Origin: Macrostomum lignano
Taxonomy: Eukaryota
Assembly: GCA_002269645.1 (NCBI GenBank)
Contig: NIVC01002684.1
Span: forward strand, 1 to 64,000
Direction of reading: 5' to 3'
Length of the DNA stretch: 64,000 nucleotides
Made by a program: the position numbers and the translations under genes. How positions within the stretch are numbered: the first letter of the stretch is position 1; each line of letters opens with the position of its first letter. The notes below the pieces were generated by a model. That model had not been told where the DNA came from and made no database searches. It saw only the letters and a program-made list of their open reading frames with translations. Positions 39,001 to 62,489 of the stretch are shown here, piece by piece.

Positions 39001-39525
39001 CCAGGCCCGAACCCATTGATCAATCCTACGTGTTCTCTATACACTAATCTTTGCAATCTGAACCGTATGTCATCACAGCCTTAAAAGGATCCCCTGATAA
39101 AAATCCTTCAGTAATGATCCTGGAGTTCCCGATTTGTGCCCAAGCAGAGTCCCATTATTCGGCTGCATGCTGCTCCCTGCTAGCTCAAACCCTTGATACC
39201 CATCCCAGGCGGGGCTCTGGCACCAGGTCACACAGAGTGGTGACAGCCGTGGGTCATGCAATAACCCGATTACCAAATTTTCACCTTAAATTAGCTATCG
39301 ATGGGGCACATGTGGGTCCTTACCCCTCAGGTCTCTATAATAACACCACCAAAAAGCTATCAATAATGGGCGGGACAACCTGAAGGCGATCTGTCGGTCA
39401 TAGCCTGGTCAATAGACGGCTGGCAGCCATCCCTATAGTCATACTATCTGATCCTTTCTCCATGAGAAGACGGTTCACTGGGGCGATTACATACATGTAA
39501 ATTATCATATCAGTTCGACACTTCA

Positions 39526-40470
39526 TCAGGAGTTCTGCAGGGCGACACTTTAGCGCCGTTTCTCTTCGTGCTGCTGCTGGACTGGGTGCTTCGGATCGCA
39601 GTCCCCTCGGCTAACGACGGCTTCCTGCTGCGCAGACGCATCGGTCGCCGCCACGGCGAAAAGCGCCTTATATATACGTGCAGCGTGCTCGGCTACGCCG
39701 ACGACCTCGCCCTCCTGTCCTCGTCCGTTGAAGGCGCCCAGCGCGAGATCGACAGGTTGGTCGAGGTGGCATCGAGCGTCGGACTGGTTGTCAACACGCT
39801 GAAAACTGAGGTGCTGACTGTGCCGGCCGACATCCCAGCGGACCTGACATGTCCTTCGCAGACGGGCAGACGACCACGCTCGCACGCTGCCAGCGCGCGG
39901 TTCACCTACCTCGGCGGTCTGGTGCCTCACGTGGAGTAAGACCTCCGGAGGCGCCGAGGTCTTGCCTGGACAGCCTTCCGTTCAATCCGGGCCGACGTCC
40001 AGTCCGAAGCGCTGCCCGACCGCCAGAGGGCACGGCTGTGGCAGGCGGTGGTCGAAGCCGTTACTGCTCTACAACGCCGAGACGTGGACACTGACGGCTA
40101 CGCTAGAGCGGCAGCTGGACTCTCAGCGCACTCAGGGCTGCTCTGTGCGGCCTTTCGAGCTGACGAGAGCGTCGGGACCGAGGCCCTGTACGATCGGGCC
40201 AAGCTGCAGCGCCCGTCCACCATCCTGCGCCGGCGGCGACTTCAACTGATGGGTCACACGTACGTGATCCGGGCAGGCGGGGTCAGGCCCAAACCCGTCG
40301 ATACGTGAACTGCCTCCTACACGACGTGAGGGCGCCCGACACTGCATGCCAAATGCAACGGGGCGGACTTCGTCCGCTCTCAGGCGCTGCGGCGCGCCAT
40401 CTGACGCACCCTGCTCTGTGACTTTGCTTGCGGGGCTGCGTAATTTGTTGTTGTTGTTGTTGTTGTTATG
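39526..40470 (+). mobile_element. 5'-truncated non-LTR retrotransposon (RTE-like LINE) remnant: RT C-terminal part, frameshifts and stop
   Basis: GVLQGDTLAPFLFVLLLDWVL, GYADDLALL, GLVVNTLKTEVL, FTYLG, LLYNAETWTL and LRRRRLQLMGH are RT and post-RT motifs. It has an in-frame TAA at ~39937, several frameshifts and a 3' (TTG)n tail at ~40445-40468. Confidence 0.85.
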
Positions 40471-49381: not shown

Positions 49382-50571
49382 ATGTCACCAAAGTCGTGGA
49401 ATCCGTGGAAGGCGTTTGACATCAGCGAGAAGGAGCGCCAGCTGATTGACAAGAGGCGCCAGATGCGCGAGTTCTGGGCCCAGGAGTACGTGCGCAAGTC
49501 CACCTCGCCACACAGGCCAAACTACAGGCTGGTGTTCGACCCGGCTGTGCAGCGGGCCATCGCTGCCAACGCCACCATGGAGAACTTTTTCCGGCCAAAC
49601 CGAAAGTCAACATTAGCGTTCCTTGGCTCGATTCTCTTCCCTGTGTGCTACGCCCTAAGCTATGACTACTTTTATCGGGTGAGTTTTCTTGGCTTACTTC
49701 GATATCTTTTGAAATTTGAGTGTTTTATGGTATGAAGAAATGGCCAGTTCACGTGTGTGCTATGGCATGAGAAATGGCCAGTTCACATGTGTGCTATGGT
49801 ATGAGAAATTGGTAGTTCACGTGTGTGCTATGGTATGAGAAATGGCCAGTTCACGTGTGCTATGGTATGAGAAATGGGCAGTTCACATGTGTGCTATGGT
49901 ATGAGAAATGGCCAGTTCACATGTGTGCTATGGTATGAGAAATGGGCAGTTCACGTGTGTGCTATGGTATGAGAAATGGGCAGTTCACGTGTGTGCTATG
50001 GTATGAGAAATGGGCAGTTTACGTGTGTGCTGTGCTATGGTACGAGTATGAGAAATGGGCAGTTTACGTGTGTGCTGTGCTATGGTATGAGAAATGGGCA
50101 GTTCACGTGTGTGCTATGGTATGAGAAATGGGCAGTTTACGTGTGTGCTGTGCTATGGTACGAGTATGAGAAATGGGCATTTTACGTGTGTGCTGTGCTA
50201 TGGTATGAGAAATGGGCAGTTCACGTGTGTGCTGTGCTATGGTATGAGAAATGGGCAGTTCACGTGTGTGCTATGGTATGAGAAATGGGCAGTTCACGTG
50301 TGTGCTATGGTATGAGAAATGGGCAGTTCACGTGTGTGCTATGGTATGAGAAATGGCCAGTTTACATGTGTGCTACGGTATGAGAAATGGCCAGTCACGT
50401 TGGATACCTTGATAATAAGCATCAATGAGTAAAATTTAATTTCAGTATGAGAAATGGCGAACTCCTGTGCTTCACTAATCTGTTTGCCTCAAATTGCAGC
50501 AACCATTTCTGAAAGCCCTGGCGAACGGAGAGGTGCCCTACAGAAATCGCAAAGGCAAGGAGCTCTACTGA
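49382..50571 (+). CDS. NDUFB4: NADH dehydrogenase [ubiquinone] 1 beta subcomplex subunit 4 (B15), 122 aa
   Basis: Exons 49382-49678 and 50500-50571 (phase 0). FDISEKERQ..RR..R..EY..LVFDPAVQRAIAA..FRPNRKSTL + TM + GEVPYRNR matches the NDUFB4 pattern (DPAxxRWxxA..FRPTxK). Confidence 0.88.
49730..50400. repeat. ~33-38-bp intronic minisatellite (GTATGAGAAATGGGCAGTTCACGTGTGTGCTATG)
   Basis: Fills the NDUFB4 intron. Confidence 0.9.
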
Positions 50572-51444
50572 GAAGCGGAGGAGATTCGAGGCACATCTTC
50601 TGTTTCCTAAACTAAATGCTTGCAAAGTTACAGTAAATATGCTATAATTAGTACTCAAAATAGGCAGTGTAAGACCTGTTAGTAGAAGTCTAGTTTGCTA
50701 ATGTTAGATATTAGTGTTCACCCCATATAGCCCTAACACAAATCTAATATTTATGCACAAAGTTCTAAGCACTTAAAATCCTCTTCATGCTACTTGACAC
50801 CCGGGATTTAGTAGTGCTGACTGACGTTACTTAGTTTTTTATTTTGCTCGGCTTCTGTAGAAATAGAAAGTTAAAATAAAAAATATACACAACCTGATCT
50901 ATTAGTATCAGCAGAGCTCGAGCATTTCTGTAAGTGTGTTGGATTAACTTACAGATCCGAAGTGCGTCCTTCCAAATCAATCGCAGTCTGGTGTGTTTTG
51001 CATTCTTACTCTGGGCAAATTCGCAATCAATAAAAAGCTAAAAAGTTCTGCTTACGATCGTAGATGAAGGCCAGTGGCCACCGAAGTCTGCTGAAACGTG
51101 ATTCAGACACGTGGTGGTCAGAAATCCAGGTGAACTGTGCCTTTCTTTCATCGTCAGAATCACAGTGCCATTTTCAGAATGCCAAAAATTGTAAGCCAGA
51201 ATGCCATCTGGCAGGCATCATGCAGTCAAAAGGTTCAAAACCAAGGAAAACACTAACATCTACTCTACCTTTTTCTTTCTCAGCCTCTCTGGCGCACAAG
51301 TCTGCAGATTTCGTGTTTACAGATTCTCGAATTCGAGCTTGACAACTGATGGAAGTCTTGAAATCCCTGGGGATATGAAATCGTTGCTCGTCTAACAAGT
51401 AGTAAGAAAATAAACGCCAACAATAACATATACAATTTTTCTTT

Positions 51445-51488
51445 TTAACCAACGCGTTTCGTCAATCATAAGACTTCGTCAGGGCCAA
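51445..51488 (-). ncRNA. Minimal type I hammerhead ribozyme motif (Penelope-like/retrozyme type)
   Basis: Minus strand reads UUGGCC-CUGACGA-A-GUC-UUAUGAUU-GAC-GAAAC-GC-GU-U-GGUUAA. Both core boxes are intact. Stem I is UUGGCC/GGUUAA, stem II is GUC/GAC, stem III is the palindrome ACGCGU, and the cleavage triplet is GUU. Confidence 0.7.
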
Positions 51489-52345
51489 TTCAATTCAACT
51501 GAATGCAATACACCAGTGAACACACTGTACAGTCCAAAGGCGGGTCAAAACAGTCCGGTAGAGTTCAATAAGCCTAAGTACAGAATGGAGGGAGAGACAG
51601 AAGACACGACACTGCTCCCGGCAAGATGTTTCTCTGCAAGATTCGCATGAATTACCCGACTGTTAACTGGTCAGCGATCCTGTTTGAAACAAGGAGACGT
51701 ACGATTTCGTCACGCAAACAGGATTCATACAAGATAACATTTTGCCTAACCGGAATGGGGCATGTTATCTTGTTCAAGCGAAAGTTATCCTGTCATGTAA
51801 TCTGGTTTATTTACCAGAGCGAGTACTCTGAGCTCATGCTCCATGATCCACTCCATTGCCAGCTAACTGCACGGTCAGTTGGGTTTGTGCATTCTGATTT
51901 ACGAAGCTTCATTAACATAGAATCTTAATTTTCTAAACAAAACAAAGAACATCAATACTAGTAGGGCTGTAAGAATAGATAAGGGACATATCAAACAATG
52001 AACATTGGGTCTGCCTCCTATCAAAAACCGTTGTACGTCAAAGTCAATTTTAGTCAAAGCTTCTTTCGAACCAAGCCAGCCCATGGGGCATGGCTTCGAG
52101 CCATACAGTTCTAGAAACTGAATTAACAGTAGCTAGCCTGACCAACTTATTCGATCTGCCAGTCCTAGCGAGTACTTTTTCACATTTCTAGTCGGACTTC
52201 TCGTTCTCACAGATCCGATGACAGCTACATGTAGGGGTCGTCTGGATTATGCGCTGTCATGAGTTCCGTACTGTACTGGCATTTTTCATCCGAAGTTCTT
52301 CATAGCCTTTAGTGTTCTTATATGAGGACCCTCTGGTTCGATTGT

Positions 52346-52640
52346 CAGGGGCGTCGCCACCGGGGGACAAGGGGGACATCCCCCCCCCCCAACCCAACCT
52401 ATTGTGACCCGTTGTGGAAATAAAAAAATTGCTTGCTTCAGGGCGACAAAATGCTTCAGGGTGTGGCTGCGGCGCCAAAATCAGTGACTGCAGCGCTAAA
52501 ATGAGTGACTGCGGCGCCAAAATGAGTGACTGCGGCACTAAAATGAGTGCTGACAATACCGATTCTGAAAATAATGTACATGTACATGTAGAATTCTTGG
52601 CTTTATCCCCCCCAACGTAAAATCCATGGCGACGCCCCTG
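52346..52640. mobile_element. hAT-like MITE (295 bp)
   Basis: 14-bp perfect TIR CAGGGGCGTCGCCA / TGGCGACGCCCCTG and a short internal tandem repeat. No convincing TSD. Confidence 0.7.
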
Positions 52641-53866
52641 ATTCTAATGTTAGATTTAGTTTTAAGCCAGAATCGGCTGCTACATGCATAAAATTGCGAC
52701 TATGCAACCAATATTTCGAGTCCGGATTACAGATGCGAGTAACTATATACGTACTGTATATTTAATGCCGTCCGCTTGTAAAAACCAATAAACTTAACAA
52801 ATACGTTCGTACAAGCAACACACGCTCCATTAGGTTGTGCGTTCCATACATGTAAAATTACTGCAACGAACCTATATAGACCCATGAACTCGCTTTGCAG
52901 GCTTCTATAAAGGTACAGCAGTCCCCGTTAAGCCGCTCAGAACTTGCTCAGGCGAAAAATGTTCTTATTATAGCGCTCGTGATTGCGTCATGCTTGACTG
53001 CTTGCGAGTTTCTCCATTAGGACACGAAGCTGTAAAACTGATTGATATGCTCGCCCATATTCCTCCGATCAGCAGGGCGTCGTCTGAACGCTTTTTCTGA
53101 GGCCGTACAATGCCTTTCACATTTATTTAGCTATATATAGTCACGAACAACAAAACAGCCATGAAAAGGTCGGGCTTCACACGATGTTAAGAATTTTTTC
53201 TCAAAGATTTCCATTGCCTGCATGTACCAGCGTATATGCAAATATTAATTACGGATGAAACAATTAAAATATTGTTTGCAATTGGGAAAGATGATGTAAG
53301 GAGCTATTACAACAATAGGTTAGCAGACTGTCACAGCTGCTATTGACAATGTCGGCTAAAATGTATTCGACACACACACGCAGCGCAGGGACTGTTGAAA
53401 CAAATACACTACGGTATTGAATGCTTTAAAAAATAGAATGATGGCTGATTCACTCTCAGGCATCGGGTTGGATGACAGCTCACGCGCGCGAAAAAAGCTG
53501 ACTAACAAAAATTCGACTGCGCGGCGAGTATTTTGCTGAAAAGACACAGCTGCCACGTGGGTGGCACGTGACTGTACAACTGGTGACTTTGACTCGTATC
53601 CATAGCGACAGGGGTTAGCAGTGTGACACAGGACGCACAATACGAGAGTACGATCGACAACAAATACATGTGCGCTGGGTTACGAGCATCAGTTTTGCTC
53701 AATTTCGAGCATTGCAAGCTCCAGCTGGCTAATAGAGGCTCAACTGCAGGCTCTTGATGACAACCTCCGGATTGAAGCGTGAACAATTATAGAGCTCGAA
53801 AAACTGCAGTTCGGAGACAAGTCTCACGGTCTAGTGAGCTCAGATTCTTTGCTATTCGGCGTCATT

Positions 53867-62489
<8,623 letters not shown>

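What the first reader, a model, noticed from the sequence alone, without database searches (positions are those of the whole stretch)
51445..51488. Self-cleaving hammerhead ribozyme hidden in intergenic DNA
Seen (minus strand): both invariant boxes CUGAnGA and GAAA, a 6-bp stem I (UUGGCC/GGUUAA, two G-U pairs), a 3-bp stem II with one extra A after the core, and a palindromic stem III (AACGCGUU), with predicted cleavage after GUU between 51451 and 51450. Established: minimal type I hammerheads with a palindromic helix III are typical of Penelope-like retroelement LTRs and retrozymes and cleave as dimers. Only one intact copy and no RT/GIY-YIG ORF are visible here. Inference: a solo PLE/retrozyme remnant lying antisense, ~870 nt downstream of the NDUFB4 stop. 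It could mark a circRNA-producing retrozyme family or terminate antisense transcripts.
Basis: partly seen in the sequence, partly recalled or inferred. Interest (0 to 1): 0.7.

Follow-up and report, generated by a model that had tools for sequence, protein, structure and literature searches.

The report
Solo Penelope-type hammerhead ribozyme relic
The 44-base motif is a real copy of the minimal hammerhead ribozyme carried by Penelope-like retrotransposons, sitting alone between two genes of the flatworm Macrostomum lignano, and it is most likely an inert leftover, not a working ribozyme.

Summary

The window is Macrostomum lignano contig NIVC01002684.1.

Rfam gives no hammerhead hit. That is uninformative, because Rfam also misses bona fide copies of this class.

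A pattern fixing only the core, GUC/GAC and ACGCGU found 109 stretches in JGI metagenomes but only 3 in 596 Gb of prokaryote genomes. The metagenome matches have features the pattern did not ask for:
- an A bulge in 94%;
- a covarying helix I;
- a 5-bp helix II;
- several lie beside homologous RT ORFs, one with a GIY-YIG domain, or flank a ~3-kb element as direct repeats.

A covariance model built from them scores the candidate 41.7 bits. The next best hit in the window scores 11, chance-class matches 20-22, and natural structured copies 42-72.

So this is a Penelope-like-element minimal hammerhead by descent. It is a solo copy:
- no partner, tandem repeat or PLE ORF lies within 64 kb;
- helix II is only 3 bp, followed by two U·U mismatches;
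- one of the three paralogous loci has lost 59 bp that remove most of the motif.

It is probably inactive. It is a new member of a known kind.

The parts
51445..51488 (-). Whole minimal type-I hammerhead motif (44 nt)
   Evidence: Sequence read. It is the only descriptor hit in the window. CM R1, built from natural PLE min-HHRs, scores it 41.7 bits with E 8e-11.
51483..51488 (-). Helix I, 5' strand UUGGCC. It pairs with 51445-51450 (6 bp, two G·U).
   Evidence: Natural relatives have a helix I of 4-7 bp, with covariation.
51476..51482 (-). Core box C3-A9, CUGACGA
   Evidence: N7 = C also occurs in natural copies such as L022 and L026.
51475..51475 (-). Unpaired A between A9 and G10.1, a hallmark of PLE min-HHRs
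   Evidence: This position was left free in the search pattern and is A in 102 of 109 natural matches. The literature describes it as a hallmark (PMC4209133).
51461..51474 (-). Helix II, GUC/GAC (3 bp, G10.1-C11.1), closing UUAUGAUU. The 4th and 5th positions are U·U mismatches.
   Evidence: The CM alignment flags pairs 4-5 as non-canonical. Natural copies usually have 5 bp, though a 3-bp family exists (L021, L075, L090, L095, L104).
51458..51460 (-). Core G12 A13 A14
51452..51457 (-). ACGCGU: A15.1...U16.1 with a palindromic interior. It can form helix III only between two copies (a dimer).
   Evidence: The duplex energy of ACGCGU with itself is -7.5 kcal/mol. The dimer model is from PMC4209133.
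51450..51451 (-). Predicted scissile bond, after U17 (51451) and before G1.1 (51450)
   Evidence: Inferred from hammerhead numbering applied to the sequence. Not tested.
51445..51450 (-). Helix I, 3' strand GGUUAA
51419..51477 (.). 59-bp segment absent from paralogous locus L001 (NIVC01001509.1). The deletion removes everything 3' of CUGAC.
   Evidence: The breakpoint lies inside the ribozyme core, so this is a deletion in L001, not an insertion in the other two loci (inference).

Best explanation
The motif is a solitary relic of a Penelope-like retroelement (PLE). Most likely it is what remains of the terminal-repeat (pLTR) region of a 5'-truncated insertion, or of a non-autonomous derivative.

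In intact PLEs this minimal type-I hammerhead sits in each flanking repeat. It has no helix III hairpin of its own. Two copies pair through the palindromic ACGCGU to build a shared helix III, and each then cleaves after H17. This is thought to process the element's RNA.

Here only one copy survives, with a helix II reduced to 3 bp. The insertion predates the triplication of this region in Macrostomum lignano and has since drifted neutrally. I infer that it is catalytically weak or dead and has no host function.

Shown: the sequence anatomy, membership of the natural family by sequence and structure profile, the absence of a partner or ORF, and the deletion in one paralog.

Inferred: PLE origin of this particular copy, its inactivity, and its neutrality.
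For: (1) **All core positions and all three helices are as required.**

(2) **It shows three of the four non-core hallmarks** listed for PLE min-HHRs by Cervera & de la Pena 2014 (PMC4209133):
- the G10.1-C11.1 pair;
- a palindromic 15.2-16.2.

(3) **The pattern is specific to animal-type sequences.** CTGANGANGTC-N(2-30)-GACGAAACGCGTH finds 109 stretches in JGI metagenomes against 3 in 596 Gb of prokaryote genomes.

(4) **The metagenome matches show features that were not in the pattern:**
- the bulge is A in 102 of 109;
- helix I has at least 3 contiguous pairs in 91 of 109, where about 5% is expected by chance;
- helix I and helix II pairs 4-5 covary. 83.5% of cells are paired, against 33-42% when the partners are slid, and 0 of 500 shuffles reach the observed score.

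(5) **These matches are linked to PLEs.**
- L042 has two copies 3058 bp apart, in direct orientation, around ORFs with an RVT_1 match.
- L098 has a 745-aa ORF with a GIY-YIG domain (7e-8) about 150 nt upstream of the hammerhead.
- That ORF is homologous to the RT ORFs next to the hammerheads in L025, L040, L051, L083, L112 and L042 (E 1e-38 to 1e-87).

(6) **The covariance model separates the candidate from chance.** CM R1 was built from 55 natural copies without the candidate.
- Candidate: 41.7 bits, E 8e-11.
- Next best in the window: 11 bits.
- Structured natural copies: 42-72 bits.
- The three prokaryote chance matches: 19.6-21.9 bits.

(7) **It is solo and decayed.**
- There is no second hit in 64 kb.
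- There is no tandem repeat.
- There is no PLE ORF by tblastn.
- Helix II pairs 4-5 are U·U.
- The hammerhead fold is -5.6 kcal/mol against an MFE of -8.7, with z = -0.4.
- A 59-bp deletion removes it in paralog L001.
Against: - **Circularity.** The search pattern and the CM training set were ascertained with 21 positions taken from the candidate itself. The CM E-value is therefore inflated. Only the free features (the bulge, helix I, and the 20-bit gap over chance-class matches) are independent evidence.
- **No family test within the species.** No other copy from M. lignano could be examined, because the genome is not searchable with these tools. The field's own criterion, membership of a within-genome consensus family with covariation, is untested.
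- **No comparative signal.** The two paralogs that keep the motif are identical across it, so they give no information on covariation or constraint.
- **Short helix II.** It is 3 bp, against 5 bp in most metagenome families and the 7-8 bp reported for Schistosoma mansoni.
- **No flank similarity.** The flanks resemble no fetched PLE repeat, and there is no TATA-like box upstream as in many natural families.
- **No Rfam support.** No hammerhead hit appears even at E<=10. The control shows that Rfam misses this class in general.
Confidence: 0.8

Rival explanations
1. Chance resemblance. An intergenic sequence happens to satisfy a loose hammerhead descriptor and has no retroelement ancestry.
For: - No relatives were found in the window or its paralogs beyond the segmental copies.
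- There is no Rfam hit.
- The fold is not unusually stable (z = -0.4).
- A loose descriptor is expected to hit a 0.76-Gb genome a handful of times. At roughly 3e-4 to 5e-3 per 64 kb, that is about 4-60 per genome.
Against: - A chance match has no reason to carry GUC/GAC, an A bulge and ACGCGU at its free positions, yet these are the choices of a large natural PLE-linked family.
- The specific pattern occurs 3 times in 596 Gb of prokaryote DNA.
- Those chance matches score 20 bits lower than the candidate under the natural-family CM.
Confidence: 0.08
2. Monomer of a non-LTR retrozyme or SINE-like non-autonomous element, a circRNA-producing family, and not a truncated autonomous PLE.
For: - Animal type-I hammerheads are often carried by small non-autonomous repeats (PMC7229834).
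- A 2026 preprint argues that retrozymes derive from PLE pLTRs, so the two are hard to separate from one small relic.
- No ORF remnant is detectable.
Against: - There is no tandem array and no second unit.
- The motif is of the 'min-HHR' kind, with a bulged nucleotide, no helix III hairpin and no recognisable loop 1/loop 2 contacts. It is not the canonical type-I hammerhead described for retrozymes.
- Natural relatives of this exact architecture sit beside RT ORFs.
Confidence: 0.1
3. A domesticated, active ribozyme. It would cleave minus-strand read-through transcripts, such as those from the GPCR-like gene 2.4 kb upstream, by pairing in trans with transcripts of the paralogous copy or of other PLE hammerheads.
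For: - The core is intact.
- Helix I is a full 6 bp.
- The motif is identical in two paralogs.
- It lies on the same strand as the upstream GPCR-like ORF.
Against: - One of the three paralogs has deleted it.
- Identity between the other two reflects their overall 96-99% identity, not constraint.
- Helix II is weak, and the hammerhead fold is disfavoured.
- Even intact min-HHRs cleave poorly in vitro, and only as dimers (PMC4209133).
Confidence: 0.04

Closest known systems
Minimal hammerhead ribozymes (min-HHRs) of metazoan Penelope-like elements (Cervera & de la Pena 2014, PMC4209133)
   Same: - Type-I topology and intact CUGANGA/GAAA core.
- Unpaired nucleotide between A9 and G10.1.
- G10.1-C11.1 pair.
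- No helix III hairpin, but a palindromic 15.x-16.x stretch that allows a dimer.
- Short, open helix I without defined loop contacts.
- Occurrence as a solo copy. The paper says most copies are single and probably come from truncated PLEs.
   Different: - Helix II is 3 bp here, against 7-8 bp in S. mansoni and 5 bp in most metagenome families found here.
- No pLTR or ORF context.
- No within-genome family could be shown.
- The species (Macrostomum lignano) is not mentioned together with hammerheads in the searched literature.
Metagenome min-HHR family with a 3-bp helix II (L021, L075, L090, L095, L104: CUGAKGA-A-GUC-GAGCA/GAACA-GAC-GAA-ACGCGU-U-AGUGU)
   Same: - Same bulged A.
- Same 3-bp GUC/GAC helix II.
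- Same ACGCGU.
- Same U17.
- Helix I of 5-6 bp.
- CM scores of 46-47 bits, against 41.7 for the candidate.
   Different: - The loop is 5 nt, against 8 nt here.
- Helix I has a different sequence.
- In L021 the motif lies directly upstream of a long ORF, related to the non-RT ORF of the two-ORF elements.
- The source organism is unknown.
Non-LTR retrozymes / canonical type-I hammerheads of animal satellite-like repeats (PMC7229834)
   Same: Type-I hammerhead with a weak or palindromic helix III that works better as a dimer. Intergenic location.
   Different: - No tandem repeat unit.
- No loop 1-loop 2 tertiary contacts.
- A bulged nucleotide at position 9/10.1.
- Rfam Hammerhead_1 does not match.

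Membership tests
Hammerhead ribozyme (catalytic core) | Conserved boxes C3-U4-G5-A6-N7-G8-A9 and G12-A13-A14, the A15.1-U16.1 pair, and H17 (not G) at the cleavage site | tested here: met
   CUGACGA ... GAA-A...U-U on the minus strand at 51482-51451.
Hammerhead ribozyme (catalytic core) | Three helices around the core | tested here: inconclusive
   Helix I is 6 bp with 2 G·U. Helix II is only 3 bp. Helix III is possible only between two molecules, via ACGCGU. In the monomer the hammerhead fold is 3.1 kcal/mol worse than the MFE.
Hammerhead ribozyme (catalytic core) | Match to the Rfam hammerhead covariance models at the gathering score | tested here: not met
   There is no hit even at E<=10. 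In a control on six loci carrying natural PLE min-HHRs, only two gave sub-threshold hits (19.6 and 18.7 bits) and four gave none. This failure is therefore a property of the class.
Hammerhead ribozyme (catalytic core) | Site-specific self-cleavage giving 2',3'-cyclic phosphate and 5'-OH ends | not testable with these tools
   This needs in vitro transcription of monomer and dimer constructs, or end-specific RNA-seq.
PLE minimal hammerhead (min-HHR) | Unpaired nucleotide between A9 and G10.1 | tested here: met
   A at 51475. The same base is found in 102 of 109 natural matches, where the position was left free.
PLE minimal hammerhead (min-HHR) | Conserved G10.1-C11.1 pair at the base of helix II | tested here: met
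   G51474-C51461.
PLE minimal hammerhead (min-HHR) | Palindromic 15.2-16.2 / loop 3 that allows a dimeric helix III | tested here: met
   ACGCGU at 51457-51452.
PLE minimal hammerhead (min-HHR) | Long, stable helix II (5-8 bp) | tested here: not met
   There are 3 bp followed by two U·U mismatches. A natural family with a 3-bp helix II does exist, so this does not exclude membership.
PLE minimal hammerhead (min-HHR) | Profile match to natural PLE-linked copies | tested here: met
   CM R1 gives 41.7 bits with E 8e-11. That is 20 bits above the chance-class matches and at the low end of the natural range of 42-72 bits. The test is partly circular, because the training set was fished out with a pattern taken from the candidate.
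PLE minimal hammerhead (min-HHR) | Belongs to a within-genome consensus family showing covariation | not testable with these tools
   The M. lignano genome could be reached only through the three NDUFB4 loci. The two copies that keep the motif are identical.
PLE minimal hammerhead (min-HHR) | Located in a pLTR flanking an RT/GIY-YIG ORF | tested here: not met
   No PLE ORF was found in the window or its paralogs. The literature says that most genomic copies are solo, so this is expected for a relic.
Non-LTR retrozyme | Tandem repeats of about 170-400 bp, each carrying a type-I hammerhead | tested here: not met
   There is no tandem array at 50600-53860 and no second hammerhead in 64 kb.

The most novel reading that the evidence does not exclude
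Macrostomum lignano may carry an undescribed, still active PLE or retrozyme lineage whose hammerheads work with a 3-bp helix II. In that case this copy and its identical paralog would cleave in trans as a heterodimer, trimming read-through transcripts in the convergent NDUFB4/GPCR intergenic region or producing small RNAs or circles.
Probability: 0.05. Interest if true: 0.5.

Novelty: new member of a known kind. Interest (0 to 1): 0.25.

Why it matters
It shows that reading raw sequence can pick out a real minimal hammerhead that the Rfam models miss. It also extends PLE-type hammerheads to a macrostomorph flatworm used as a regeneration model.

Taken by itself the locus is an ordinary transposon relic.

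The more useful by-product is methodological. The string CUGANGA-A-GUC...GAC-GAA-ACGCGU-H is a highly specific tag for PLE repeats: 109 hits in metagenomes against 3 in 596 Gb of prokaryote genomes. A covariance model built from those hits recovers decayed copies that the exact pattern misses, in a class that Rfam does not detect.

Tried and rejected
**Rfam.** I ran it at the gathering score on the whole window, and at E<=10 on 1 kb and on 86 nt. No hammerhead appeared. I later showed this to be uninformative.

**Repeats in the window.** blastn of 50600-52400 against the window found no related copy.

**Routes into the M. lignano genome.**
- An exact look-up and a homology search with the GPCR-like ORF found nothing.
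- The search with the LINE-like RT fragment returned UniRef-only M. lignano entries and short metagenome contigs, so the genome could not be sampled that way.
- Only the NDUFB4 protein gave loci.

**Thermodynamics.** There is no excess stability, and the hammerhead fold is not the MFE. I treated this as weak evidence, because min-HHRs are intrinsically unstable as monomers.

**Flank comparison with 109 metagenome loci.** Similarity is confined to the ribozyme itself.

**Considered and rejected.**
- The 59-bp indel as an insertion in the window lineage. The breakpoint lies inside the core, so the pre-existing half-ribozyme would have to be a coincidence.
- The LINE-type RT at 39466-39936 as the parent element. 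It is the wrong class, and it is 11.5 kb away on the other strand.

Full report
**Observation.** The minus strand of 51488..51445 reads TTGGCC CTGACGA A GTC TTATGATT GAC GAA ACGCGT T GGTTAA.
- The predicted scissile bond lies between 51451 and 51450.
- One correction of detail: the 8-nt palindrome AACGCGTT is real, but only ACGCGU can serve as helix III. The outer A and U are A14 and the cleavage-site nucleotide.

**Where we are.** A two-exon NDUFB4 gene lies on the plus strand (49382-49678 and 50500-50571).
- Its 122-aa product is 100% identical to a Macrostomum lignano protein.
- Its look-up returned three loci of assembly GCA_002269645.1. One of them, L003 = NIVC01002684.1:39382-60571, is the window itself at identical coordinates.
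- The other genes in the window are animal genes: DEG/ENaC channels, an Fz domain, galaxin-like repeats and a GPCR-like ORF.
- The motif is 874 nt past the NDUFB4 stop on the opposite strand. It is also 2.4 kb downstream of, and on the same strand as, the GPCR-like ORF at 53867-55147. It therefore lies in a convergent intergenic region.
- AATAAA signals at about 50875 and 51029 suggest that the NDUFB4 mRNA ends well before it. This is read from the sequence and is an inference.

**Is it more than chance?**
- A descriptor scan I wrote finds this as the only hit on either strand of the window.
- A relaxed version (helix I of at least 4 bp, both core variants) appeared once in 300.
- That is rare per window, but it still allows a handful of chance matches in a 0.76-Gb genome. 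The descriptor alone does not settle the matter.

**Rfam.**
- No hammerhead model matches, at the gathering score or at E<=10 in 1 kb or 86 nt.
- I tested whether this counts against the motif by running Rfam on six metagenome loci that carry bona fide relatives (see below).
- Only two gave sub-threshold hammerhead hits (19.6 and 18.7 bits), and four gave none.
- Rfam therefore does not detect this class, and its silence here is uninformative.

**What the literature says the class looks like.** Cervera & de la Pena 2014 (PMC4209133) describe 'min-HHRs' in the flanking repeats of Penelope-like elements (PLEs).
- They are type-I hammerheads without a helix III hairpin, and they are thought to act as dimers.
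- Most genomic copies are single and are attributed to truncated PLEs.
- In vitro activity is low and is seen only in dimeric or helix-III-extended constructs.
- The candidate shows the bulged nucleotide, G10.1-C11.1 and the palindrome.

**Relatives elsewhere.** I searched the JGI metagenome collection with CTGANGANGTC-N(2-30)-GACGAAACGCGTH. This fixes the core, GUC/GAC and ACGCGU, and leaves N7, the bulge, the interior of helix II, H17 and all of helix I free.
- It returned 109 stretches.
- The same pattern has only 3 matches in 596 Gb of bacterial and archaeal genomes. That is about 5e-12 per base, or roughly 0.004 expected in the M. lignano genome.
- Among the metagenome matches, the free bulge position is A in 102 of 109.
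- Helix I has at least 3 contiguous pairs in 91 of 109 and at least 4 in 78 of 109, where about 5% and 2% are expected by chance.
- Helix II usually extends to 5 bp.
- Different families carry different but complementary helix I sequences: CUCC/GGAG, UUCC/GGAA, CACU/AGUG, GCAGU/ACUGC, GUUAC/GUAAC and CGGAG/CUCCG.
- On an alignment of 55 distinct copies, 83.5% of cells are paired, against 33-42% when the partners are slid. Double changes occur at all six helix I pairs and at helix II pairs 4 and 5, and 0 of 500 shuffles reach the observed covariation score.
- One family (L021, L075, L090, L095, L104) has the candidate's architecture: a 3-bp GUC/GAC helix II, a bulged A, ACGCGU, U17 and a helix I of 5-6 bp.

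**These relatives belong to PLEs.**
- L042 carries two copies 3058 bp apart in direct orientation, around ORFs of 310 and 580 aa. The larger has a weak RVT_1 match.
- L098 has a 745-aa ORF with a GIY-YIG domain (E 7e-8), ending about 150 nt upstream of the hammerhead.
- That ORF is homologous over about 500 residues to the RT ORFs adjacent to the hammerheads in L025, L040, L051, L083, L112 and L042 (E 1e-38 to 1e-87).

**Profile test.** A covariance model (R1) was built from the 55 natural copies, without the candidate, using a 4-bp helix I and a 5-bp helix II.
- It scores the candidate 41.7 bits with E 8e-11. The next best hit in the window scores 11 bits.
- Structured natural copies score 42-72 bits.
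- The three prokaryote matches share all fixed positions but lack helix I and the A bulge. They score 19.6-21.9 bits.
- The training set was fished out with a pattern taken from the candidate, so the absolute E-value is inflated.
- The 20-bit gap over pattern-matching chance sequences comes only from features that were not in the pattern. That gap is the independent part of the evidence.

**Solo and probably inert.**
- R1 with filters off finds no second copy in 64 kb.
- There is no tandem repeat or long direct repeat at 50600-53860.
- No other copy of 50600-52400 exists in the window.
- PLE ORFs from the metagenome loci find nothing by tblastn in the window or its paralogs.
- The only RT-like ORF is a LINE-type fragment (YADD) at 39466-39936.
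- The CM alignment flags helix II pairs 4 and 5 as U·U.
- The monomer's hammerhead fold is -5.6 kcal/mol against an MFE of -8.7, and the z-score against shuffles is -0.4.
- Of the three paralogous loci, L002 carries an identical 44-mer, which gives no information.
- L001 lacks 59 bp (window 51419-51477), which removes everything 3' of CUGAC.
- Because the breakpoint lies inside the core, this is a deletion in L001. The insertion therefore predates the triplication of the region.
- The region has several other indels between the paralogs, consistent with neutral drift.

**Conclusion.**
- It is unsupported in its retrozyme and functional extensions.
- I put about 0.8 on a PLE-derived relic, including a non-autonomous derivative that cannot be excluded. 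I put about 0.08 on pure chance and about 0.04 on a working, host-relevant ribozyme.
- The class has been known since 2014, including in flatworms (Schistosoma mansoni).
- The searched literature holds no paper that combines 'hammerhead ribozyme' with Macrostomum, so this is a new member of a known kind.
- The missing piece is a genome-wide family test in M. lignano, which these tools could not run.

Noticed in passing
window 52345-52641: A MITE-like element. It has perfect 15-bp terminal inverted repeats (TCAGGGGCGTCGCCA / TGGCGACGCCCCTGA) 267 nt apart, enclosing a 21-bp tandem repeat (52463-52549) and a C-run. The alignment to paralog L001 is interrupted just at its left end (window 52323-52378).
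   Followed up: no
window 51677-51773: Two adjacent perfect hairpins. Their arms are ATCCTGTTTG/CAAACAGGAT (10 bp) and CAAGATAACAT/ATGTTATCTTG (11 bp). They lie 190-290 nt upstream of the hammerhead as read on the minus strand. The first one caused the spurious Lacto-rpoB hit (24.4 bits). Whether they belong to the same relic is unknown.
   Followed up: no
window 49720-50400 (NDUFB4 intron): A minisatellite with a unit of about 34 bp fills most of the single intron. Its length differs among the three paralogous loci, whose gene spans are 1190, 1220 and 1545 bp, while the 122-aa protein is identical in all three.
   Followed up: partly
L001, L002 and L003 (= window 39382-60571): There are three paralogous copies of at least 20 kb in the M. 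lignano assembly, 93-99% identical and differing by many indels and tandem-repeat length changes (for example at 55150-55750, 56117-56408 and 57452-57652). This is what one would expect from recent large-scale duplication or uncollapsed haplotypes.
   Followed up: partly
window 39466-39936 (+): A LINE-type reverse transcriptase fragment (RVT_1 9e-11, motif YADD). Its closest relatives, at 57-73% identity, are on short ENA/JGI metagenome contigs. Flatworm-like DNA is therefore present in public metagenomes.
   Followed up: partly
metagenome loci L025, L040, L051, L054, L083, L112: The PLE-like elements next to the hammerhead have two long ORFs. The order is hammerhead, then an ORF of about 620-680 aa with no Pfam match, then an RT ORF of about 640 aa (the downstream RT ORF is cut at the contig end in L083 and L112). 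The first ORF is conserved between loci (E down to 1e-112). I did not check whether this two-ORF layout corresponds to a named PLE clade.
   Followed up: partly
metagenome loci, e.g. L040, L075, L012, L073, L083, L022 (about 25-40 nt upstream of the hammerhead): Many natural families have a TATA-like box (CATAAAAACC, ATATAAACC, ATATATAAG and similar) about 30 nt upstream of helix I. This suggests that transcription starts at or just before the ribozyme. Three families share a conserved AATAAA...TTACAACTACAAG stretch just downstream. The M. lignano copy has neither.
   Followed up: no
metagenome loci L082, L055, L100, L036, L052, L015, L078, L097, L103, L007, L038, L062, L024, L045, L071: The CM recovered 17 further hammerhead copies that fail the exact pattern. 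They carry core or helix mutations such as CTAAAGA, GACAAAAC or ACGTGT, so decayed copies lie next to intact ones. Several occur as inverted pairs a few hundred bp apart, as described for S. mansoni.
   Followed up: partly
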